From positions 1 through 9,518 of the forward strand of contig MTSL01000109.1 of the NCBI GenBank assembly GCA_002794465.1: a DNA stretch of 9,518 bases, given 5' to 3'. Shown one piece after another: positions 1 through 9,518 of the stretch. The stretch is from Paramicrosporidium saccamoebae KSL3 (taxonomy: Eukaryota; Fungi; Cryptomycota). Each line of letters opens with the position of its first letter. Position 1 is the stretch's first letter. The position numbers were made by a program, and so were the translations under genes. The notes under the pieces are model-generated. The model was not told where the DNA came from. It ran no database searches and saw only the letters and a list, made by a program, of their open reading frames with translations.

Positions 1-77
1 CGAGAGGTCCAAGATCCTCGAGATAACCGAGAGGTCCAAGATCCTCGAGATAGCCGAGAGGTCCAAGATCCTCGAGA
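1..77 (+). repeat. 27-bp coding tandem repeat, about 2.9 copies (CGAGAGGTCCAAGATCCTCGAGATARC)
   Basis: Units at 1-27 and 28-54 differ at one base; 55-77 matches the first 23 nt exactly. There are no spacers. Confidence 0.95.
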
Positions 78-165
78 GACTCAAATCGCTCAAAATACTC
101 AAAATACTCAAAATACTCAAAACACCCAAGAGGCACCTTTGTCTAAAAGACCGAGGCCAGATTAA
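1..165 (+). CDS. 3' end of an unknown protein, open at the left edge (REVQDPRDN REVQDPRDS REVQDPRETQIAQNTQNTQNTQNTQEAPLSKRPRPD*)
   Basis: Frame +1 is open from base 1 to TAA at 163-165. Both repeat types have 3n periods (27 and 9 nt) that keep this frame. It ends in an NLS-like KRPR. Absent from the ORF track because there is no start codon in the window. Confidence 0.6.
   Translation, partial: REVQDPRDNREVQDPRDSREVQDPRETQIAQNTQNTQNTQNTQEAPLSKRPRPD
79..129 (+). repeat. 9-bp coding tandem repeat (ACTCAAAAT-like; TQN), about 5.5 copies
   Basis: actcaaatc/gctcaaaat/actcaaaat/actcaaaat/actcaaaac/acccaa read directly from the sequence. Confidence 0.9.
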
Positions 166-278: not shown

Positions 279-1892
279 TTAGTCGGTCCAGTTTAGGCCA
301 TTGACGGCCAAAAGACCCGTCTTTTCAATCTGCTCCCTTGTTTTGACATGTTTTTCCATCGTTTCATATAGTCGTTGGCGCAGTCCTCGCTTATGATGAT
401 GAAGGATGCAATGCTGGTCGGCCACCTCTTGCCAAGATTTCAGATTCCGGTTCTGGCTGACAAGCGTTTTGATGCGCCGGGTGGACGGAAGGGCATTGTC
501 TTGGTGCGGATAGTCGTCAAAGTCGACTGTATTGCTGAAATCAAGACTTGGGATGGATAGTCCCTTGAACAACGAATCAATAAATTCTTCAGATACATCT
601 TCCAGCTTGGCCGGCATCCAATTTGCACTCTTTTCCTTTCTTACCAGCTTTGCAGACACGCCCTCGCGAAGATCGGCAACCCTTTCCAAAAAGTTCTTGG
701 CCAAAATGTACTCCATCCGTAGACAATCTCGGAATGACATTTCCCGACCGAGACGGAGCATCTTCATCGTGACAAGACTGGCAGTAGGCGACATGGTTAG
801 GATTGTTTTCAGAGTATTCTTGGCCCACTCATCTTCACGATTCTCTAGCTGGCTAATCACTTTCTGCAACGTCGGTGCCGAAAAGTACTGATTAATATCA
901 TCTAGCCTGGTCTGCAAGGAAAAGGGCTGCTCTTCACCAGCAAATTGCTCAATGTACTCTGCCAATGCCTCTGGCGCGACATCCGAATGGGAGAGACTCT
1001 CCACCAAGTCATCCACACGGACCGAGGGTACAAAGTGCGTTGCAATTCCGGCATGACTATAAATCATTAGACACTCTCTTCCGATCAGTACTAGTTGTCA
1101 TAGCCTTTAAGACGATGGCCGGTCAAGGCGAGAAATGTTCCCAGCTCGCCATCAAGTCTGGGCAAAAAGAAGGAGCCTCCCACATCTGGATAGAATCCAA
1201 TCGCCGTCTCAGGCATGGCAAACAGCGTATTCTCAGTGGCAATTCTAAAATGTCCGTGAACAGATATTCCCGCACCTCCACCCACTACCATCAACAGGCA
1301 AAAAGCGAGGTTTACTTGTGATTCCATCCAGAACCGAAATTATTGGCTTTTTGTATGTGCCAAGGAGATGATTTAACCGGTATTCTCGTCGGAAAAACTC
1401 TGCCCTCTGCGTGTCTGGCAATTTGTCATCCAGAACGCCTACAAATCAGCAACCACATGGATCGGGGAGATGATACCGACAACGTCGCCGCCAGCGCAAA
1501 AGGCCTTTGTCTTGGTGTTAGTGTTGTCCGCTTTCAGGATTATCATTCGGCAACTGGGACTGTTCTCCCACACCTAAACCCATTATTAGTGGGGATAAGA
1601 AGCTAACCTGCAGCGCACCGAGAATGGCCTCTACCATTCCAGCATTGAGTGCATGGAGAGCCGCTGGTCTGTTTAATTCGACAATGCGGACGGCTCCTTT
1701 CGAATGAAACTTGACGAATTCACACTATAACTGGTCAAAAATTAAATATTGATACATTCGGTAGAGAGCTGGTCATTTTAGTGGCAAAAGATGGATATGC
1801 CTACAGCTCCAAAAGCCCAACAAGCATACTGCGCTAGAAAAAGAGTATTGTCCAGTAAACTGACGCGCCAAATGTCTCAATCGGAGTAGCAT
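279..1892 (-). CDS. EHD3: Mitochondrial 3-hydroxyisobutyryl-CoA hydrolase (crotonase family, fungal Ehd3/mS47 type), 471 aa; exons 1892-1830, 1800-1756, 1724-1608, 1573-1477, 1438-1316, 1284-1092, 1056-279
   Basis: Removing six GT..TAG introns gives one 1416-nt frame with family motifs [64 protein letters not shown] (catalytic Glu/Asp retained), [19 protein letters not shown] and [13 protein letters not shown]. The N-terminus [21 protein letters not shown] (3 Arg, no acidic residues) resembles a mitochondrial presequence. Exons 1-2 are less certain than exons 3-7. Confidence 0.92.
1057..1091 (-). other. EHD3 intron 6, 35 nt, phase 2 (GTACTG...CTAAT...TTATAG)
   Basis: AAC TA|T CAT restores GYDN-Y-HAGIATH and removes the TAG that ends ORF 1091..1327. 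Confidence 0.93.
1285..1315 (-). other. EHD3 intron 5, 31 nt, phase 1 (GTAAAC...TTGAT.GGTAG)
   Basis: ACA A|TG GGT restores the conserved DGIT-M-GGG motif exactly. Confidence 0.93.
1439..1476 (-). other. EHD3 intron 4, 38 nt, phase 1 (GTATCA...CTGAT.TTGTAG)
   Basis: Restores [15 protein letters not shown]...EFFRREY. Confidence 0.9.
1574..1607 (-). other. EHD3 intron 3, 34 nt, phase 0 (GTTAGC...ACTAAT...TTTAG)
   Basis: CTAAT branch point; joins GALQ to [14 protein letters not shown]. Confidence 0.9.
1725..1755 (-). other. EHD3 intron 2, 31 nt, phase 0 (GTATCA...TTGAC...TTATAG)
   Basis: Removes an in-frame TGA and joins to [20 protein letters not shown]. The CAG 6 nt upstream of the acceptor would give TTA TAG (stop), so TAG is the workable acceptor. 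Confidence 0.75.
1801..1829 (-). other. EHD3 intron 1, 29 nt, phase 0 (GTATGC...CTGTAG)
   Basis: Joins the presequence exon to [15 protein letters not shown] in frame. There is no conserved motif to anchor it. Confidence 0.65.
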
Positions 1893-2119: not shown

Positions 2120-3670
2120 TCAGTCAACGTAGGAGGAATCAATCATTATTCTCACTTCACGCAAGGTAAAAATGGTCGAAATTTTAAACGAATCTAAAAG
2201 CTGTCTCATTGCTCCCCGGTTCACTATGAATTGGTTCCAGTCGAGGTTTTCAGCGGCAAGGCCAAACAATGCATCAAGATCGGCCTTTACTGAATAGTAG
2301 ATCATGAAGCATAATGTGGCGACAACCAAATTCAGACCTATTTCGTTGATCGAACTTAGAGACGTCTCGATGAGTGACTTGTATCGAGCAATATTGTCAA
2401 CTTGGCCAAAATACCAGTTTCTAGGCATTCTGGTGATCCTTGACATATCCTGGATAAACGGCACTCCCGAATCAGCATACTGTCTCGAATACACAACACA
2501 AGGTCCAATCGGTCCTTCTTTGCGCCACACATCGAGTCGATGTTGCAACGAGAGTTCTTTGAAGGGCAGAAATATTGCTGGAACCAAACTACAGACACGC
2601 TGTCGTTCCAGCGGGCACTGCTGAAGATAGACACTAATGATAACTCGTCCGGTGGCGGGCGTTAAAAGATCTGGGATCGCCCTGTCTATGATAGTCTTCA
2701 TGCTCTCAATCAACTGCACTTTGTCTTTTGTTGTTTGGTGCAATTTCAACACCAAGCTAGCCAATATCTCCCACAAAGATCTTTCAGCCGCAACCAGCCC
2801 ATCGTTGACAAGCTCAAAAACGCACTCCAACAGTCGCCTTCTGGTCATTGGTTCACTGGGAGTGGGATTGACCAAGGTCAGCCCCCAGGCAAGGTTTGGG
2901 AGAGCAATATCTGCAATATCTACAATATCATCTTGGGGGGTCAGTGCCAATAAAATAACGGTAGCCTTGAAGACACTTTTGGGATCGTCGTCAGGTTCTT
3001 TCAAAAACGAAAACAAACTACTACTTTGTGGAAAGTACTTTAGAAACATTCGATAAAACTCTGGAATCATGTCATCAACGAGCACACCAAAGAGCTTTTC
3101 GGCAAATTCCATCGACATGCCTATTAGTAATGTATCGAGCCACCTCAGGGACTCCATCTTGAAAAGATTTACAGAGATGGATTGCTGAAGCAAGGCAAAA
3201 ATTATCTCCTCTTGGCTACGAGTGTAATTAAATGCCAGCGGCTGTCGCCCATTGCAATAATGACCTCTAAGGGCCAGACAATGAAAACAGGAACATGGCA
3301 TCCTCTCGGCGGCAAAAGGATTTGCTTCATACCAAACTCCTGTGGCAACGGCCATTTCGGCAAGCGGTATATTGTTGAGTAGCTTTTGAAAATTGAACAT
3401 GGTTGGATGGAATTGTGTATACGCGAAAAGCTTGGCAAGCTGAGCGCTTCGCTCCTCATCCTCAACCACACTCGAGTAAGGGCTTTCAAAATCGAATCGC
3501 GGATAAGCTATAAGACCGCTAATGATTGCCGCGGATTCCTGATTAAGGGAGCAAGATGCAAAAAAGGCTTTCAGTGCATTCGAGCTGCAGCGTTCAGCCA
3601 GTAAATGTGCGGTAAAAGAGACGAGAACACAATCTGCCACAGCAAGGCACCACCATATCATTGCTGTCAT
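2120..3670 (-). CDS. Hypothetical protein, about 516 aa, no recognisable family; start codon uncertain
   Basis: Uninterrupted 1.58-kb frame with globular, Leu-rich composition, co-oriented with its neighbours. First ATG is at 3670 (the ORF track uses TTG at 3700). An in-frame TGA lies at 3706-3704. Hydrophobic N-terminus; additional small 5' exons cannot be excluded. Confidence 0.75.
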   Translation of the reverse strand: MTAMIWWCLAVADCVLVSFTAHLLAERCSSNALKAFFASCSLNQESAAIISGLIAYPRFDFESPYSSVVEDEERSAQLAKLFAYTQFHPTMFNFQKLLNNIPLAEMAVATGVWYEANPFAAERMPCSCFHCLALRGHYCNGRQPLAFNYTRSQEEIIFALLQQSISVNLFKMESLRWLDTLLIGMSMEFAEKLFGVLVDDMIPEFYRMFLKYFPQSSSLFSFLKEPDDDPKSVFKATVILLALTPQDDIVDIADIALPNLAWGLTLVNPTPSEPMTRRRLLECVFELVNDGLVAAERSLWEILASLVLKLHQTTKDKVQLIESMKTIIDRAIPDLLTPATGRVIISVYLQQCPLERQRVCSLVPAIFLPFKELSLQHRLDVWRKEGPIGPCVVYSRQYADSGVPFIQDMSRITRMPRNWYFGQVDNIARYKSLIETSLSSINEIGLNLVVATLCFMIYYSVKADLDALFGLAAENLDWNQFIVNRGAMRQLLDSFKISTIFTLREVRIMIDSSYVD

Positions 3671-3948
3671 AATTGTGGCAATAAAATGAATTTGGCACAA
3701 GAATCAGCGCTTTTGCCCTGGTGATTGCGTGATGAGACTATTACCACAATTTCAATATTAATAAGTGACAGGAAACTACCAGCCTATATTGGCGAGTCTA
3801 TCTTTCCACTCCTGTAACCTGAATCTCATTTGCATGTTTGGACAAATACCCAGCTCCCAGTGAAACATTCCACCATTTCACACATGCTCACTCGCCTTTA
3901 CAAAATCGCCTAATATGACATCTTTATGAGCAAAAAAATTATAATTAA

Positions 3949-4006: not shown

Positions 4007-7000
4007 TTATACGCAATCTTCGTCTTCAAGCTCTCCCAAAATCAAATTAATGCGCTCCCGTCGTAAGACTTCGTCGTCGTGGCGAGACCACAGCATTTGG
4101 CTTTTGGAGCGACGCAGCGTGTCAATCCGCTCGGCGGAACGCATTGTCGGTCCAGTGCGGGTCCGTGGACGAGTTTCAAAGATGGTGGAACCCGAGGCGG
4201 AGGCTTCTGAAGCAATCAGAGTGGAACGCGAGATGGAACGGGCAGGCGGCATGCGGATTGTGCTGGCAGTGTGACGACGATTCGGTCGGACCCGACGCTC
4301 ATATGGCATCGGACCAAACCATCCCTTTACATATTTGGGATTGCGGTACAGCTTCCATGCCACAAAGACCATAATAGCCACACCCAAAATACATAGTGCA
4401 ATGATCAGAATGGGCGGTCGGATGGGTCTCTTCACATCAGCCACCATGATGGAGAATTCAGTCAAATGGGAACAGGCACATTGGACATGGCTAGTGTTAT
4501 AGGCCAAAACTCGACATCCTTCTTCACTCCAAGAAGAAGAGGTCTGGTTGAGATAGCGATCGTACCAAACACACTTTGGTCGTCCACCCCGCTCCACGCG
4601 ACGTTGAAATTCACTGGACATTTGCATCAAAAAGGTCAAATGGCGGGTGCGGAACCACGGCGCCAGCACTTGAGATGCATTCCTAAAGGCCAATTCCAGA
4701 ATGTTAGTATCGATGCTAGAATTGCGCATCAGATTGGCGCTGGTAAAGGAACAGCGATATCCAAGACAGGACATGTCCTGAGAGACCATTCCACGGAGAT
4801 CCGGAAGTGTAAAGCCACAGAGTCGAGAAACGCGCGTTATATTCCGAGTGTCGATTAAACCAAACTCGAGGGCCTGTCGTCCACCCTCCCATGAGAATGG
4901 CTCACCATCCCATCCATCATAATCCTCATAGTCGCCAGGAGACGGGGTGTCCTCTTCAGCTGTAAAAACTAACAGAGGCTCGGCATCCTCATCAGCCTGC
5001 ACTAATCTCCTCTTTCTTGCCTTTTTCATAGATGCCATTTCTGTTTTGACCGATGATTGTGTAGCCGTCGATTGATTTGGTTGTCCCGCTGTCTGTCTAG
5101 CCGACTCCCCCGTTGACGGTCCGGCTGACTGCGCAGAGGTCTTATCCCCCCGATTTCCACCGGCACTTGCATCCGCATTGGCAAGATCACAGTACATTGT
5201 GCGCTGTACACAAGTCTCCAAAATATTCTTAATCTCGTGTACTACAAAACTGGCCGAACTACCACCACGGGGATTTTCATAAATAGGACCAAGCAACTTG
5301 AGCAATTTGATGACGTGATGGGGAGCAAAGCATCCATCGGGTCGCGAATTGGACATTCCCTGCGCCAAACGAAGAGTAATACGTAGCAACAGGGGACGCA
5401 AATCAATTGGCAATTTCCCTGGCAGAATGCGCTGCAAATAGTCCAAAAAGTAGGGACCCGTCTCGCTGGCTTCAATATGGGTGGACTGGGTCAACGAATC
5501 AACCACTTGAAGGATACGCGCCAATGTGACATTTCCATTCTTGGCCGTTGTCAAATCTGGCAATTTTTCACCCGGCTCTGATGCCAGCTTGTTGGCCATC
5601 TTGACTCCCTTTGCCTGTCCGGCCAAAACACTCGGCACCACATTGGCAGCGGTGAGGGCGAGGATTTCATAACCAGCGCGCTGATTGCGGGTGCGTTCAA
5701 ATCTTTGGAGTTGGGAAGCCAAAAAGACTTCTTTAGGGACAGTTCCATGCCGGGCGCTGATATTTCGTACCGGTACGGTGGTGATCAAGCCATCGCCATC
5801 TAAAATGTCCACCTCTAGCAGATAATGGCCCACATCAGTGGTAAAGGAGAGATGGGAACTGGGAGTAGGCGGTCCAAGGGGAATGGGATCACCACGAATA
5901 CGCGTCTTGAAGCGATAGCGCAGATTGGGACCAGACCAGCCATGGCAGGCGACAGTAAAACGATTCTCAAAAGCAGTTCCCACTGCGGATGATGTCAATT
6001 CACAATATCCCGCACTCGGCGGCTCTCTCACACGTACTGTGCGATATGCCCAACCGACAATGCCAGTGGTCCCATCCAACACGGCCACACGGAAACAATA
6101 CTCAGTTCCAGGCAATAGTCCTGCGGGTGAAATTTCTTTAAGACTCTTTGGTTCTGCCGTCCATTGTGGTTCACTACTCAGCCCAGTAGTAATTGCATAT
6201 GCTTGACGATTACAGTAGGGCAACGACTCCCAATGGAACGTGTGGTTTCTCATCTGCAACGGATCGCGCGGTTTAGCCACCGCTGCCATCATTTGCAATG
6301 TCCTCTCTTCCGTACTAACAACACTCTTTTGCATTGCAATCTCCACTCGTGGAACTGACGGATCCCGTGCCACTGCCACCACAATGGAATCACTAATCTT
6401 GTATCCAAATTGGCGATGAGTTGCTGTTGCGATAAATTCCATGTCGGTTGCCTTTTCAAAGTCTTTTCCATGAAGCACAAAATTGGTGCCTATAGACTTT
6501 GCAAGTTTTGTAGACTTTGTAGCTTCTGTAGCTTCTGTAGATTCTGTAGTCTTTACACCTTTTCCATCCTCTACACCTACATCTTTTCCACCCCCCAACT
6601 CCGACTCTGAATCCAGATCCAAATCCATAGCCAAACCCATATCAATGGTCCAATCTTCTCCATTCACTTGACAGGGTGACTCTCGATCCATGGATAGACA
6701 TTGCCATTCCACTGAAAATTCTTCCAAAGATGCTCCCACAGTTCTTACCCGTATTTGCGTGTCATCTTCATAGCCCACCAATCGACTACCGCCAATAATT
6801 TCCAATCGAACATTACTCGGTAGCACCGTCAAGGCGTGGGTGAACAGATAGGTGGAACTTTGGGCAGGATTCTTGTCCATCTTTACAGGCTCATCTTTAG
6901 TCTCCTCGTCGTATCCTTCCTCCATATAGTCCATCGCGTCCACCGAAACTACTACCCGCACCCCTAACACATAGTCACCAGGCTCTAATGAATTGGCTGC

Positions 7001-9518
7001 AAAGACGACAGCAGGACGGTTGGCACCACGGATGCGCACCCGAGTGGGACCAGAAAGGATACTCCACGCCATGGTTGCATTGTATGATCTATCACACACT
7101 GTGGCAGGTAATAGTGCAGTGAGTTGCACCGCCTCGTCCTGTCGCACTCGCTGCGGCCCTTCAATGGCCACGGCTGGCACGTGCATATTAGGAACGCGTG
7201 ATACTGTGGCGTAGCCCGTACCACCCACTCCAAAGAGATTCCACAGAGTCAGCTGCAGGGTATATGCCGTATATTCGGTCAACAGTCCCGCTGGAATGGA
7301 AAAGGCCAGTTTTCCCGTCTTGATTACATCAATGGCAGCGGCGTGCAAGAACTGGCGCAATGGCGCATCCAAAAAGTGATTATCCACTGCCGTCGAGTTA
7401 AAGTCAAAATGAGCATCGATAAAGGCGCGTCCCACACTTCCAACGGAACGGGACAGATCCACCGAAACAAACTCATCACAGCCCCCCACCACTTCCGGCG
7501 CCTCTACCACAATAGTCGGCGGATCAGCGTCAAAAGGCGGTGCCACTTCAATGGCGCCCGTTACAAACGCGCGGTTCAGCGAGTCGACATTTGATAATGT
7601 CCCATCTCTGAATACGATCAATCGTCCCGGCTGTAGTGCATTCTTTTCGCGTCGCGTGTAACGACTATTTACTTGTAGGCGCATTTCTAGCGGCGACACA
7701 AAGTACAACAGACAATCTTCTGGACGATTTCCCAACAATGCACCATTGGGCACATCGCGGGGCTGCATCACCAAGAAAGTATCACAGCGGAATCTTCGAC
7801 CAACTTCGGCATTCACCGGCCTATCAAAGCGTACAAAGACGTATTCTCCGCCTGCACTATACTCCGCCAACACTGCCAATGGAGCACGTGCCGGTGGGGC
7901 GTCTGTAAACACAATCTTTTGCTCCTCCACCACCTCTCCTTCAAAGAGCTCTGCCCCGTCCACTGCCGCTCCCACCAATCGATTGTTAATCCGCACCGGT
8001 GCTACTTTCACCATGGACGAGTTTTCTTGATTCCACGTGACCGTCGGGGTATAAGTGATGGTGTATGTTGTAGCTTTGGCAAAGCGTCGCAATGTCTGAT
8101 GCTGTGTGGCTGTGCTCCAACAAGTACTACGGGAACTTGAAATGGACGGTCGACTGCGTCTATGAGAACGACAGGGACAAGTATTTCCCGGTGTCATCAA
8201 CGACGTAATAAATGTCTGACTGCTGATGGTATAGGTGCTACTCCTTACCAACGTCGTGGTGACCACCGAGACTACAGTCGAGAAGGGAGTTGTTGTCAGC
8301 GTCGTATCCACTTGGGTGGTCAATGTCGTACTATCTGTTGTTGTAGTGCTGGTCGACGTGGTAGTAGAGGTAGTAGTAGTGGTGGTGGTAGTGGTAGTGG
8401 TGGTATTGGCCAAGGCATAGCGTACCATTAGTCCTTGATCTACATGGTTAGTCTCTCTCATTAAATGTACCCAGATTGAAAAAGGTGGTGCGGGCATAGC
8501 GGATTAGATTCTGCGTCATTCGGGGCAGATAGCTAAACACTTCCAGATATGCTCGCAGATAGCGCACTTGACCCGCCTTCAAATCCGTATACAAACTCAT
8601 TGTTCCCGGATGTTGTCGATACCAATGCAATGGCTGAGCACAGCCCTCCAAGTGATTGTCGCGTGTCACCACCTTGGCCAGGAATTCATAGTCCTCGAAT
8701 CCCACGCCATACTCTTCCGTAAAGCCTCCTGAGTCGATAAAGAATTGTCGATGAACCAACATGTTCGAGTCGCCAAACACATTTTTCAATACTCCATTAT
8801 TGAGTGCCGGTCCCAAGGGAACATAGCGGGCAGTTGCCTTATGCGGTTGAGGCATTGATCGACCACTGAACAATTCATGCCCCGTCGTCACCACATCCGC
8901 TCCAGTAAGTTCTGCCACTCGTGCCATCCATTCCACCTGCTCCGCTTTGGCCACGTCATCATCGTCCATGAACAGGATGTACTTGCCGCGGGCATGTTTT
9001 GCTCCCGTGTTTCGGGCCGCTCCCAAGTAGCGATTTGGCTCCCGTAGCACCTTCCAACCCCGCTCCTGCCACCACGTCCACGATAACTCACTGAGGAATT
9101 TGATGGCCTCTGCGTCTGTACTGCCATCATCCACCAAAACCACTTCAAAGTTACGGAATGTTTGGCGTTCCAGCGATTCAAGCGCCTGTTGCAGCAGCTT
9201 TGGTCGGTTGTAATGCGTCAGCACTACCGAAACCAATGGACTTCCCAATGGATCCGTTTGTATCGGCAGCACAAAGCCTTCCGTTGGACAAGGCGGTAAA
9301 GGACGCGCATGTACATCCGCCAACAGCTGACGCCATTGCGCCTCATATTGACGCACTGCCACTTGTGGGCGTCCCAACAAGACGCCATTGTTCAAGACAT
9401 CCAGCATGCGTTTAGAAAGGGCCACCGTGTCGTTGGAGGAAAAGAGTACATCGCGACGATCCTGAATGTGCACCAATTCCTGGGCACTTTTTAGATTACT
9501 GGCAATCACTGGCACTCC
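4007..9518 (-). CDS. Large multidomain membrane protein, 5'-incomplete, at least 1826 aa: GT4-like tail, GT2 glycosyltransferase, Thr-rich stalk, PKD/REJ-like ectodomain, GPS, single TM, cytoplasmic tail; exons >9518-8471 and 8439-4007
   Basis: ORFs 8448..9515 and 4007..8497 join in frame after removing the 31-nt intron (CTG G|AT CAA gives ...TTFFNL-D-QGLMVRYALANTTT). The downstream ORF alone has no signal-peptide-like start. Each ORF is clearly coding; the fusion rests on the predicted intron. Confidence 0.85.
4355..4411 (-). other. Single transmembrane helix ILIIALCILGVAIMVFVAW
   Basis: 19 uncharged, mostly hydrophobic residues followed by KLYRNPK (positive-inside rule). No other hydrophobic stretch in the remaining 115 aa. 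Confidence 0.88.
4442..4573 (-). other. GPS (GPCR proteolysis site) motif of a GAIN domain; predicted cleavage H-L / T between 4463 and 4462
   Basis: CVWYD....SWSEEGC......SHVQCACSHLTEFSIMV has all four Cys, both Trp and the HL/T triad of the canonical GPS. Confidence 0.92.
5770..7522 (-). other. PKD/REJ-like ectodomain (boundaries approximate)
   Basis: Repeated Ig-like beta segments with W-S/W-Q-C/W-E motifs (GCDEFVSVDLSRS, PAVAIEGP, WSILSG, LEPGDYVLGV, FSVEWQC, LLPGTEYCFRV) and the REJ hallmark EPPSAGYCEL...GTAFENRFTVACHGW...LRYRF...LEVDILDGDG. Confidence 0.75.
6507..6550 (-). repeat. 9-bp coding repeat, 5 copies (TES TEA TEA TKS TK)
   Basis: + strand tttgtagac tttgtagct tctgtagct tctgtagat tctgtagt. 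Confidence 0.85.
8201..8404 (-). repeat. Thr/Ser-rich mucin-like stalk encoded by an (ACC/ACT)n tract
   Basis: 12 consecutive Thr (8369-8404); 48 of 68 residues are Ser or Thr by manual count. Confidence 0.9.
8440..8470 (-). other. Intron, 31 nt, phase 1, GTACATTTAATGAGAGAGACTAACCATGTAG
   Basis: GTA donor, GACTAAC branch point 4 nt before the terminal TAG, same size class and TAG ending as the six EHD3 introns, and it restores the frame. Confidence 0.88.
8601..9239 (-). other. GT2 (GT-A fold) glycosyltransferase domain
   Basis: PLVSVVLTHYNR, FEVVLVDDGSTD, N..LGAARNTG..HARGKYILFMDDDD (DxD at 8955-8966), GGF...GFEDYEF (ED acceptor-base motif) and YRQH. Confidence 0.93.
9306..9518 (-). other. 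C-terminal end of a probable GT-B/GT4-type glycosyltransferase domain
   Basis: GVPVIASNLKSAQELV matches the G-x-P-V-I-A-S/T...E-L-V segment that follows the E-x7-E motif in Glycos_transf_1 (GT4) enzymes, and is followed by helical 'ALSKRMLDVL...W..LL'. The rest lies outside the window. Confidence 0.6.

What the first reader, a model, noticed from the sequence alone, without database searches (positions are those of the whole stretch)
4007..9518. Glycosyltransferase(s) fused to a polycystin/adhesion-GPCR-type self-cleaving ectodomain
Seen: two ORFs that look separate are joined in frame by a 31-nt intron with an ACTAAC branch point. The product is [GT4-like]-[GT2]-[Thr stalk]-[REJ-like]-[GPS]-[TM]-[tail], at least 1826 aa. 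Established: GT2 and GT4 are nucleotide-sugar transferases; REJ plus GPS are hallmarks of polycystin-1/PKDREJ-type surface proteins. I know of no characterised protein that combines them. Inference: an enzyme-tipped surface or secretory-pathway protein that holds glycosyltransferases on a long stalk and can shed them by autoproteolysis. Possible roles are building or remodelling the wall or spore coat, or glycosylating host-interface molecules. Novelty is unverified without a database search.
Basis: partly seen in the sequence, partly recalled or inferred. Interest (0 to 1): 0.9.

Follow-up and report, generated by a model that had tools for sequence, protein, structure and literature searches.

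The report
Glycosyltransferase pair fused to self-cleaving REJ–GAIN ectodomain
A fungus-like microbe encodes one large membrane protein, joined across a real 31-base intron, that couples two sugar-adding enzyme domains to the self-cleaving REJ/GAIN module known from polycystin-1 and adhesion receptors; relatives with this design already sit unnamed in databases, but I found no study of them.

Summary
On the minus strand, ORF 9518..8448 and ORF 8497..4007 are joined by a 31-nt GT–AG intron (8470..8440, phase 1). The product is an 1826-aa open frame, cut at the contig end.

Support for the intron:
- Three relatives read straight through the junction.
- Two others carry an intron at the same codon and phase (37 and 58 nt).
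- The neighbouring gene needs five introns of 31–38 nt.

Domain checks:
- GT2: Pfam E=8e-28, with DxD.
- GPS: E=1e-12, with a canonical HL|T site.
- GAIN fold: the top 11 Foldseek hits are all GAIN domains.
- REJ: Pfam misses it, but a profile of relatives' REJ segments scores 82.7 bits.
- One C-terminal TM.
- GT4: only a 45-aa tail lies in the window. Relatives have the full domain.

The architecture is not unique. It occurs as "hypothetical protein" in chytrids, aphelids, metchnikovellid microsporidia and dictyostelids. Six literature searches found no description.

Full-length fungal-side relatives also have an N-terminal signal anchor, so "shedding" the enzymes is doubtful.

Most likely this is a lumenal two-domain glycan synthase held on a self-cleaving, non-dissociating REJ–GAIN scaffold.

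The parts
8471..9518 (-). Exon 1 as far as the contig goes. It encodes aa 1-349 plus the first base of codon 350. The 5' part of the gene (N-terminal anchor, EGF-like motif, most of GT4) lies beyond the contig end.
   Evidence: The frame is open to position 9518. The window is the whole 9518-bp contig (P0125 row). Relatives show what is missing.
9384..9518 (-). C-terminal tail of the GT4-like (GT-B, Glycos_transf_1) domain, aa 1-45
   Evidence: Pfam PF00534 gives E=0.14 on the 45 residues present. The same stretch in P0002/P0003 lies inside a PF00534/PF13692 hit, and in Cavenderia P0037 PF00534 gives E=3.8e-8.
8499..9239 (-). GT2 (GT-A fold) glycosyltransferase domain, aa 94-340. Motifs: VDDGSTD, DxD (FMDDDD) and GFEDYE.
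   Evidence: PF00535 E=8.2e-28 and PF10111 E=7.7e-16. Best PDB sequence matches are GalT1 5hea (5e-17), chondroitin synthase 2z87 and heparosan synthase 8vh7, with the DxD aligned. NCBIfam gives only generic EPS-type GT2 hits, all below cut-off.
8440..8470 (-). 31-nt spliceosomal intron, phase 1: GTACAT...ACTAAC...TAG
   Evidence: There is an intron at the same codon and phase in L003 (37 nt) and L005 (58 nt). It is absent in P0001, P0124 and P0002. Five similar introns lie in the neighbouring gene.
4007..8439 (-). Exon 2: the rest of codon 350 to the stop codon (4009..4007)
8078..8407 (-). Thr/Ser-rich mucin-like stalk, aa 361-470. It includes a conserved CPC-R-x-basic motif (CPCRSHRRSR).
   Evidence: 39% Thr and 17% Ser. 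The motif is conserved in P0001, P0124, P0002 and P0003.
6461..7930 (-). Array of beta-sandwich (Ig/PKD-like) domains, aa 520-1009. It carries a clade-specific low-complexity insert at aa ~945-1000.
   Evidence: The AF2 model is all-beta, pLDDT 76. The family profile matches the KIAA0319L PKD domain, E=7e-6. An 18-nt tandem repeat lies at 6493-6554.
5771..6460 (-). Recognisable core of the REJ domain, aa 1010-1239
   Evidence: A profile built from the Pfam-defined REJ segments of five relatives outside the query's clade scores 82.7 bits here, against at most 1.7 bits for 200 shuffles. Pfam REJ in relatives: E=1.4e-44 (P0037) and 3.5e-20 (P0022).
4418..5770 (-). GAIN domain, aa 1240-1690: helical subdomain A, a disordered loop at aa ~1436-1530, and beta-sandwich subdomain B
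   Evidence: AF2 pLDDT 75.9, pTM 0.71. The top 11 Foldseek PDB hits are all GAIN domains: BAI3 4dlo E=3.7e-9, then CELSR1, BAI2, latrophilins, CD97, GPR126 and others.
4448..4579 (-). GPS motif, aa 1637-1680. The canonical cleavage tripeptide H1674-L1675|T1676 is at 4468..4460, followed by a TEFSIMV strand.
   Evidence: PF01825 E=1.1e-12, 48.6 bits against a cut-off of 22.5. The profile hits the ADGRL3 GPS at E=3.7e-9. C.C[SN]HLT[ED]F is conserved across the family.
4349..4417 (-). Single transmembrane helix, aa 1691-1713
   Evidence: It is the only Kyte-Doolittle peak above 1.6 in the 1826 aa and is helical in the AF2 model.
4010..4348 (-). Cytosolic tail, aa 1714-1826. It is Arg/Ser-rich and has a conserved W-S/T-R-x-D-E-E..LR.ERI motif.
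   Evidence: The motif is conserved in P0121-P0123 and the third ORF of L001.

Best explanation
Shown:
- Positions 9518..4007 (minus strand) are the 3' 5.5 kb of one spliced gene of an uncultured fungus-like (holomycotan) eukaryote.
- Its product is a large single-chain membrane glycoprotein.
- By comparison with full-length relatives, the domain order is: short cytosolic N-terminus, signal-anchor TM, EGF-like Cys motif, GT4-like GT-B domain, GT2 GT-A domain, Thr/Ser mucin stalk, PKD/Ig-like sandwiches, REJ, GAIN with a canonical HL|T GPS site, one TM, and a ~113-aa basic/Ser-rich cytosolic tail.
- There is no hydrophobic segment between the GT domains and the GAIN domain.

Inferred:
- GAIN/GPS, EGF-like and mucin modules are lumenal or extracellular, so both enzyme domains face the ER/Golgi lumen or the outside.
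- The GT4-GT2 pair works in the secretory pathway, where nucleotide sugars are available. It probably acts as a two-activity glycan synthase or elongase for a wall, coat or matrix glycan or glycoprotein, in the way bifunctional type II Golgi polymerases and bacterial GT2/GT4 polysaccharide enzymes work.
- The GAIN domain cuts the chain between Leu1675 and Thr1676 early in biogenesis. The two fragments stay non-covalently joined through the TEFSIMV strand.
- The REJ-GAIN-TM-tail part acts as scaffold, trafficking tag and possibly force- or phosphorylation-sensitive coupler to the cytoplasm. It is not a device for releasing the enzymes.
For: One gene:
- The splice restores the frame and the exact junction length.
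- The intron position is shared with L003 and L005 and absent in three relatives.
- P0002 is a single uninterrupted 2018-aa ORF with the whole architecture.
- The transcriptome ORFs P0005 and P0249 are complete at 1911 and 1937 aa.

Domains:
- Pfam finds GT2 and GPS.
- REJ is found by the family profile and by Pfam in relatives.
- The GAIN fold is supported by AF2 and Foldseek.

Topology:
- There is only one hydrophobic segment in the 1826 aa.
- Relatives have an N-terminal basic stretch plus a TM, followed by an EGF-like motif.
- There are 14 N-x-S/T sequons.

Catalytic competence of GT2:
- DDG, DxD and ED motifs are kept in the query and in P0001-P0005.

Polysaccharide-type affinity:
- The closest non-eukaryotic relatives are bacterial multi-domain GT2+GT4 'cell wall/O-antigen biosynthesis' proteins at 38-48% identity.
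- PDB neighbours include the two-domain polymerases chondroitin synthase and heparosan synthase.

Cleavage competence:
- C.C.HL|TEF is canonical and conserved in the clade, many chytrids and dictyostelids.
- Non-dissociation after cleavage is the established behaviour of GAIN domains (PMC3321182).
Against: - There is no RNA, protein or enzyme data for this gene or any relative.
- Sugar donor, acceptor and product are unknown. NCBIfam gives no equivalog.
- In the window's own clade the GT4 EX7E motif reads D/E-x7-Q, so that domain may be altered or inactive.
- Several relatives (P0002, P0004, P0005, P0013, P0014) lack HL|T, so cleavage is not essential to the family.
- The N-terminal TM could be a cleaved signal peptide. 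It clearly looks like one in dictyostelids, and in that case shedding becomes possible.
- The N-terminus of this particular gene is off the contig.
Confidence: 0.6

Rival explanations
1. One reading: a surface protein that holds glycosyltransferases on a long stalk outside the cell and releases them by GPS autoproteolysis, to remodel the wall or host-interface glycans.
For: The HL|T site is canonical. There is a long mucin stalk. Dictyostelid members have a cleavable-looking signal peptide, so their N-terminal fragment would have no membrane anchor of its own.
Against: Fungal-side full-length relatives, including the window's own clade (L003, P0002, P0003), start with a cytosolic stretch plus a TM that would keep the N-terminal fragment anchored. 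GAIN cleavage does not dissociate the fragments. Nucleotide-sugar donors are not available outside the cell (general knowledge).
Confidence: 0.15
2. A polycystin-1/suREJ-like sensor. The REJ-GAIN-TM-tail part is the working part and signals through its tail or a partner channel. The GT-like domains bind glycans or mark ligands rather than build a polymer.
For: REJ plus GAIN is the hallmark of PC1/PKDREJ/suREJ receptors. The tail is conserved and rich in basophilic-kinase-type sites. The GT4 EX7E motif is altered in this clade. Some relatives have TIG+REJ+GPS with no detected GT domain (P0258, P0261, P0265).
Against: The GT2 catalytic motifs are fully conserved across distant lineages. There is no PLAT, 11-TM or 7-TM region, only one TM. 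The GT-less relatives may be ORF fragments of intron-containing genes.
Confidence: 0.15
3. Two separate genes, or an assembly or frameshift artefact. On this view the 31 nt are not removed, ORF A ends at 8448, and ORF B starts at an internal ATG.
For: ORF B begins with ATG at 8497. There is no transcript evidence for this contig. Logan contigs can carry frameshifts: L001 has one next to a G8 run.
Against: Unspliced, ORF A ends in 7 residues (GTFNERD*) and ORF B begins with 19 residues (MPAPPFSIWVHLMRETNHV) that match no relative. Spliced, the junction matches relatives residue for residue and in length. An intron sits at the same codon and phase in two other species, with different lengths and sequences. 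The intron has the same size and signals as five others on the contig. A simple indel would leave about 10 extra residues.
Confidence: 0.03

Closest known systems
Unnamed database relatives with the same architecture: Amphiamblys sp. OIR57414.1, Amoeboaphelidium occidentale KAI3659010.1, Chytriomyces hyalinus KAJ3237422.1, Cavenderia fasciculata XP_004359431.1, Dictyostelium purpureum XP_003286850.1
   Same: They share GT4 + GT2 + (stalk/TIG/PKD) + REJ + GPS + a C-terminal TM. Homology runs end to end. HL|T is conserved in many of them.
   Different: Identity is 25-48%. The window's clade is known only from metagenome/SRA contigs (P0001, P0121-P0124, P0002/3). Dictyostelids add TIG domains and use a signal peptide rather than a signal anchor. 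None of these proteins is characterised.
Polycystin-1 / PKDREJ / sea-urchin suREJ proteins
   Same: A REJ module is followed by a GAIN/GPS autoproteolytic domain next to the membrane, with PKD/Ig-like repeats upstream. suREJ1 is likewise single-pass (my own knowledge).
   Different: There is no PLAT domain, no 11-TM or channel-like region, and no LRR or C-type lectin domain. This protein carries two glycosyltransferase domains, which no polycystin-family protein has.
Adhesion GPCRs (latrophilin, BAI, CELSR, GPR126 and others)
   Same: The GAIN fold has both subdomains and a GPS with HL|T and a TxF..M-type last strand. The expected behaviour is cleavage without dissociation.
   Different: There is no 7TM domain, so the strand after the cleavage site cannot act as a tethered agonist in cis. 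A recent survey states that GAIN-7TM linkage arose in holozoans (PMC12716839). This protein shows GAIN in another context in Holomycota and Amoebozoa.
Bacterial multi-domain GT2/GT4 polysaccharide (O-antigen/EPS) glycosyltransferases
   Same: They are the best non-eukaryotic matches to the GT module, at 38-48% identity and E about 1e-80, with the same GT2+GT4 pairing. NCBIfam and PDB neighbours are EPS, teichuronic, chondroitin and heparosan enzymes.
   Different: The bacterial proteins are cytoplasmic, often with TPR domains, and have no REJ/GAIN/TM. Domain order and partners differ.
Bifunctional type II Golgi glycan polymerases such as LARGE1, EXT1/2 and chondroitin synthases (analogy from my own knowledge)
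   Same: An N-terminal signal anchor with two different GT domains in the lumen, building repeating glycans.
   Different: They belong to different GT families and have no C-terminal REJ-GAIN-TM. This is a functional analogy only and was not tested here.

Membership tests
Spliceosomal intron (8470..8440) | GT-AG ends, a branch-point-like YTRAY near the 3' end, and frame restoration | tested here: met
   GTACAT..ACTAAC..TAG; removing it gives one ORF. It has the same form as five introns in the adjacent gene.
Spliceosomal intron (8470..8440) | Position conserved, or cleanly absent, in orthologues | tested here: met
   The same codon and phase are used in L003 (37 nt) and L005 (58 nt). The intron is precisely absent in P0001, P0124 and P0002.
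Spliceosomal intron (8470..8440) | Spliced RNA observed | not testable with these tools
   No reads or transcriptome are available for this contig.
GT2 glycosyltransferases (GT-A) | Pfam PF00535 above the gathering score | tested here: met
   97.9 bits against a cut-off of 23.3.
GT2 glycosyltransferases (GT-A) | Nucleotide- and metal-binding Asp motifs (DDG, DxD) | tested here: met
   VDDGSTD and FMDDDD align to INDGSTD and FVDSDD of 5hea.
GT2 glycosyltransferases (GT-A) | Transferase activity and donor/acceptor specificity | not testable with these tools
   NCBIfam gives no equivalog-level match.
GT4 / Glycos_transf_1 (GT-B) | Pfam PF00534 match | tested here: inconclusive
   Only 45 aa lie in the window, E=0.14. 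Full-length relatives do match: P0037 at 3.8e-8 and P0005 at 1.3e-5.
GT4 / Glycos_transf_1 (GT-B) | EX7E motif | tested here: not met
   The motif lies just upstream of the window. In the window's clade it reads D/E-x7-Q (L003, P0002, P0003). Chytrid P0018 keeps E-x7-E.
GAIN/GPS autoproteolytic domain | GPS motif, Pfam PF01825 above the gathering score, with the conserved Cys/Trp pattern | tested here: met
   48.6 bits against a cut-off of 22.5. The sequence is CVWYD..WSEEGC..C.C.
GAIN/GPS autoproteolytic domain | HL|T/S cleavage tripeptide | tested here: met
   C-A-C-S-H1674-L1675-T1676-EFSIMV.
GAIN/GPS autoproteolytic domain | Full GAIN fold: helical subdomain A plus beta subdomain B | tested here: met
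   AF2 pLDDT 75.9. The top 11 Foldseek PDB hits are all GAIN domains, E down to 3.7e-9, with up to 415 aligned columns.
GAIN/GPS autoproteolytic domain | Actual self-cleavage | not testable with these tools
   This needs protein expression.
REJ domain (PF02010) | Direct Pfam match | tested here: not met
   There is no REJ hit at E<=1 in the query. Hits are weak in its clade.
REJ domain (PF02010) | Homology to Pfam-defined REJ segments of relatives | tested here: met
   82.7 bits over aa 1010-1239, against at most 1.7 bits for shuffles. The family profile covers REJ of P0037, P0258, P0261 and P0265.
REJ domain (PF02010) | Fold match to a solved REJ structure | tested here: inconclusive
   The model is all-beta sandwiches. 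Foldseek returns only generic Ig/FN3/macroglobulin arrays with TM-scores of 0.13-0.25.
Polycystin-1 / PKDREJ family | PLAT domain and an 11-TM, channel-like C-terminal half | tested here: not met
   One hydrophobic segment only, and no PLAT or PKD_channel hit.
Adhesion GPCR | 7TM (7tm_2) domain after GAIN | tested here: not met
   One TM, then a 113-aa tail.

The most novel reading that the evidence does not exclude
The GT4-GT2-REJ-GAIN protein may be an ancient wall or matrix glycan synthase, at least as old as the common ancestor of Amoebozoa and Holomycota. In this reading the self-cleaving GAIN domain and the REJ module act as a mechanochemical coupler. They hold the nascent glycan or enzyme at the membrane and report strain or completion to the cytoplasm through the conserved tail. 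GAIN/REJ would then have served extracellular-glycan assembly before being recruited to GPCRs and polycystins.
Probability: 0.12. Interest if true: 0.85.

Novelty: new variant of a known kind. Interest (0 to 1): 0.6.

Why it matters
GAIN/GPS and REJ modules have been studied almost only as parts of animal adhesion GPCRs and polycystins, where what they sense is still debated. Here the same modules, with an intact cleavage site, are joined to a pair of catalytically plausible glycosyltransferases. The family spans chytrids, aphelids, early microsporidia and social amoebae.

This gives a non-animal, enzyme-linked setting in which to ask what GAIN autoproteolysis is for. It also points to an unstudied candidate enzyme for wall, spore-coat or cyst glycans in early-diverging fungi and their parasitic relatives. 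Some relatives belong to groups in which laboratory genetics is possible (dictyostelids, some chytrids), so the question can be tested.

For this gene itself the gain is smaller. It adds a new, deep-branching clade to a family that is already catalogued but unnamed. It also documents a genome with 31-38-nt introns.

Tried and rejected
- Exact-sequence look-up of the 1496-aa ORF found no contig, so the missing 5' end could not be recovered. The window is the entire contig.
- The word-indexed search with the ectodomain alone returned only 5 hits, because low-complexity words filled the candidate list. The exhaustive profile search was needed.
- The first exhaustive job failed because the profile exceeded 1200 positions. 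It was rerun with trimmed sequences.
- The Foldseek search with the REJ-region model gave only generic beta-sandwich arrays and does not settle REJ identity.
- NCBIfam gave no specific name for the GT2 domain.
- Six literature searches found no description of a GT+REJ+GPS protein. The supplement of Arac 2012, which might identify the Dictyostelium GAIN protein, is not held.
- I considered programmed frameshift or a sequencing indel instead of an intron. I rejected this because of the exact junction length and the shared intron position.
- I considered a cytosolic GT topology. I rejected it because there is no TM between the GT domains and GAIN.
- I considered polycystin or aGPCR membership. 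I rejected it because there is only one TM.
Full report
**1. What is in the sequence**

The gene lies on the minus strand. ORF A runs from the contig edge (9518) to a stop at 8448. ORF B runs from 8497 to 4007 (1496 aa) in another frame, overlapping ORF A by 50 nt. The 31 bases GTACATTTAATGAGAGAGACTAACCATGTAG occupy 8470..8440. Removing them joins the frames in phase 1 (G|AT = Asp350). The result is one open frame of 1826 codons that ends at the stop 4009..4007 and contains TTFFNLDQGLMVR. The window is the complete 9518-bp contig (P0125 row), so the 5' part of the gene is missing. An exact-sequence look-up found no longer copy.

**2. Is the intron real?**

Three independent lines say yes.

- Relatives without a break. 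P0124 (65% identity), P0001 (56%) and P0002 (39%; a single uninterrupted 2018-aa ORF on L002) read straight through the junction. The spliced window sequence FFNLDQGLMVRYALAN has exactly the length of FFEIESGPMLKYALAN in P0124. Unspliced, ORF A would end in GTFNERD* and ORF B would begin MPAPPFSIWVHLMRETNHV. Neither stretch matches any relative.
- Relatives with an intron at the same place. L003 (the locus of P0121, 55% identity) has GTATGTTTAGATGGGGATTAGGCTGCTGATCATGTAG (37 nt) at the same codon and phase. L005 (the locus of P0123, 47% identity) has a 58-nt GTACTC...GACTAATG...CTTAG intron there. In both, the split codon again gives Asp. The three intron sequences are unrelated in sequence and length, yet the flanking coding sequence is conserved. 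L001, L003 and L005 also share a second short intron (59, 40 and 41 nt) at NNG|VLLGRPQ, which the window lacks. This presence/absence pattern is typical of spliceosomal introns.
- The genome uses introns of this kind. The neighbouring gene (1776..279, minus) needs five introns of 31, 34, 38, 31 and 35 nt. All begin GTA/GTT, have a YTRAY element 6-11 nt from the end, and end in TAG. Once they are removed, the 442-aa product matches Pfam ECH_2 over the full model, 1-335/335, E=8.6e-118.

Transcript evidence is lacking for this contig. However, transcriptome-derived relatives encode the whole fusion as complete ORFs (P0005, 1911 aa; P0249, 1937 aa).

**3. Domains**

Residue numbers refer to the spliced protein.

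- **GT2.** Pfam gives aa 97-222, E=8.2e-28. The DDG and DxD motifs align with those of solved GT-A enzymes (GalT1 5hea, chondroitin synthase, heparosan synthase). NCBIfam gives only sub-threshold matches to exopolysaccharide-type GT2s.
- **GT4-like domain.** The first 45 residues are its tail (E=0.14 alone). Relatives carry the whole domain. In the window's clade the EX7E motif, which lies just upstream of the contig end, reads D/E-x7-Q. Activity of that domain is therefore uncertain.
- **Stalk.** aa 361-470 are 56% Thr+Ser.
- **REJ.** Pfam does not report REJ for the query. It does for relatives: Cavenderia P0037 at 1.4e-44 and chytrid P0022 at 3.5e-20. A profile that I built from the Pfam-delimited REJ segments of five relatives outside the query's clade scores 82.7 bits on aa 1010-1239. 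The maximum for 200 shuffles was 1.7 bits.
- **Region upstream of REJ.** It is a chain of beta-sandwiches. The AF2 model has pLDDT 76.4. One sandwich matches the KIAA0319L PKD domain at profile level. Foldseek found only generic Ig/FN3/macroglobulin arrays, so the fold is uninformative for REJ.
- **GAIN/GPS.** aa 1240-1690 fold as a helical subdomain plus a beta subdomain (pLDDT 75.9, pTM 0.71). The best 11 PDB matches are all GAIN domains. The GPS motif scores 48.6 bits. It carries C-x-C-S-H-L|T-E-F-S-I-M-V, that is, the canonical cleavage tripeptide and a last strand resembling the TxFAVLM consensus quoted for adhesion GPCRs.
- **Membrane and tail.** There is one hydrophobic segment, aa 1691-1713. 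It is followed by a conserved Arg/Ser-rich tail.

**4. The family**

The architecture is not unique. A single-sequence search returned more than 30 proteins of 1700-2960 aa that combine PF00534/PF00535 with PF02010 and/or PF01825. They come from:

- many Chytridiomycota;
- Amphiamblys sp., a metchnikovellid microsporidian (OIR57414.1);
- an aphelid, Amoeboaphelidium occidentale (KAI3659010.1);
- dictyostelids: Cavenderia fasciculata XP_004359431.1 and D. purpureum XP_003286850.1, both with added TIG/PKD domains.

A local profile of the ectodomain aligns end to end with these proteins. The exhaustive search of 1.84 billion representatives found 1813 relatives of the ectodomain at E<=1e-3 and 68 at E<=1e-30. 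All sampled names are 'hypothetical protein' or a domain label.

The window's closest relatives (P0001, P0121-P0124, P0002/3) come only from SRA and metagenome assemblies. The neighbouring ECH_2 protein is 42-45% identical to those of early-diverging fungi. The host is therefore an uncultured holomycotan with no close sequenced relative. By GT-gene similarity it sits nearest the metchnikovellids. That placement is an inference.

The GT module is 38-48% identical to bacterial multi-domain GT2/GT4 'cell-wall/O-antigen' enzymes.

**5. Topology and mechanism**

Full-length relatives on the fungal side begin with 20-50 mostly charged residues, then a TM, then an EGF-like Cys motif. This is the layout of a type II signal anchor, as in Golgi glycosyltransferases. 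Dictyostelid members instead have a classical signal peptide.

No hydrophobic segment separates the GT domains from GAIN. The enzymes must therefore be on the lumenal/extracellular side.

Nucleotide sugars are supplied in the ER/Golgi lumen (general knowledge). The most economical model is therefore a two-domain glycan synthase acting in the secretory pathway. It would be tied at its far end to a REJ-GAIN-TM-tail module that cleaves itself but stays assembled (behaviour established for GAIN domains, PMC3321182).

Cleavage-site loss in several relatives (P0002, P0004, P0005, P0013, P0014) shows that cleavage is dispensable in parts of the family.

**6. Comparison with known systems and novelty**

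- It works partly like polycystin-1/suREJ (REJ+GAIN) and partly like adhesion GPCRs (GAIN). It fails the defining membrane-domain tests for both: one TM, no PLAT, no 7TM.
- It is a bona fide GT2 and a bona fide GAIN/GPS protein.
- Six full-text searches found no paper describing a glycosyltransferase fused to REJ/GAIN.
- Arac et al. 2012 reported a GAIN domain in D. discoideum without mentioning such a fusion.
- A 2025 survey states that GAIN-rich N-termini of aGPCRs appear restricted to holozoans.

The window's gene is therefore a new, divergent member of a family that is catalogued but uncharacterised and, as far as I could find, undescribed. Relative to characterised biology, that family is a new variant of the GAIN/REJ surface-protein theme.

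**7. Verdict**

The architecture and the splice are right. The claim to uniqueness is wrong at database level, and the shedding mechanism is doubtful.
- Interest is moderate to high (0.6).

Noticed in passing
window 279..1776 (minus strand): A complete 3-hydroxyisobutyryl-CoA hydrolase-like gene (ECH_2 family) is interrupted by five ultrashort introns: 1755-1725, 1607-1574, 1476-1439, 1315-1285 and 1091-1057 (31-38 nt). The best named relatives are early-diverging fungi at 42-45% identity. A valine-catabolism enzyme of this kind is normally mitochondrial, so the host presumably keeps that metabolism.
   Followed up: yes
window 2123..3703 (minus strand): A 527-codon open frame lies between the two identified genes and has no Pfam match. 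It is probably a gene of unknown function, and its start and any introns were not determined.
   Followed up: partly
window 1..129: Tandem repeats sit at the contig end: a 27-nt unit x2.9 at 1-77 and a 9/18-nt unit at 79-129. They may explain why the assembly stops there.
   Followed up: no
window 6493..6554 (aa ~945-1000 of the protein): An 18-nt imperfect tandem repeat encodes a TESTEATEATKSTK-type acidic low-complexity insert inside the REJ region. The closest relatives lack it, and it is disordered in the model. It splits the REJ match and probably explains why Pfam misses REJ here.
   Followed up: partly
window 8140..8170 (aa ~437-447) and relatives P0001, P0124, P0002, P0003: A conserved CPC-R-x-(K/R)-(K/R)-x-R motif lies in the stalk: CPCRSHRRSR, CRSHRKPR, CRTYKKKR and CRVLNKKR. 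It could be a Kex2/furin-type dibasic processing site that would separate the enzyme half from the REJ-GAIN half. This is an idea only and was not tested.
   Followed up: no
L003 ~6470-6500, P0002 aa ~440-452, just upstream of the window's first codon: The EX7E motif of the GT4-like domain reads D/E-x7-Q in the window's clade but E-x7-E in chytrid P0018. The GT-B domain may be altered or inactive in this clade.
   Followed up: partly
P0005 (EukProt EP00923, TSA GHVN01052902): This complete 1911-aa family member is filed under the gregarine Selenidium pygospionis, but its sequence closely resembles that of Amphiamblys. It probably comes from a metchnikovellid hyperparasite in that transcriptome, not from the gregarine.
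   Followed up: partly
L001 5060..5110: In the 56%-identical relative, the gene changes frame next to a run of eight G's with no intron signals. This is probably an assembly indel in that Logan contig.
   Followed up: partly
P0258, P0261, P0265 (JGI metagenome proteins): These relatives of about 1400 aa have TIG + REJ + GPS and align with the whole ectodomain, but no glycosyltransferase domain was detected. They are either genuine GT-less paralogues or ORF fragments of intron-containing genes.
   Followed up: partly
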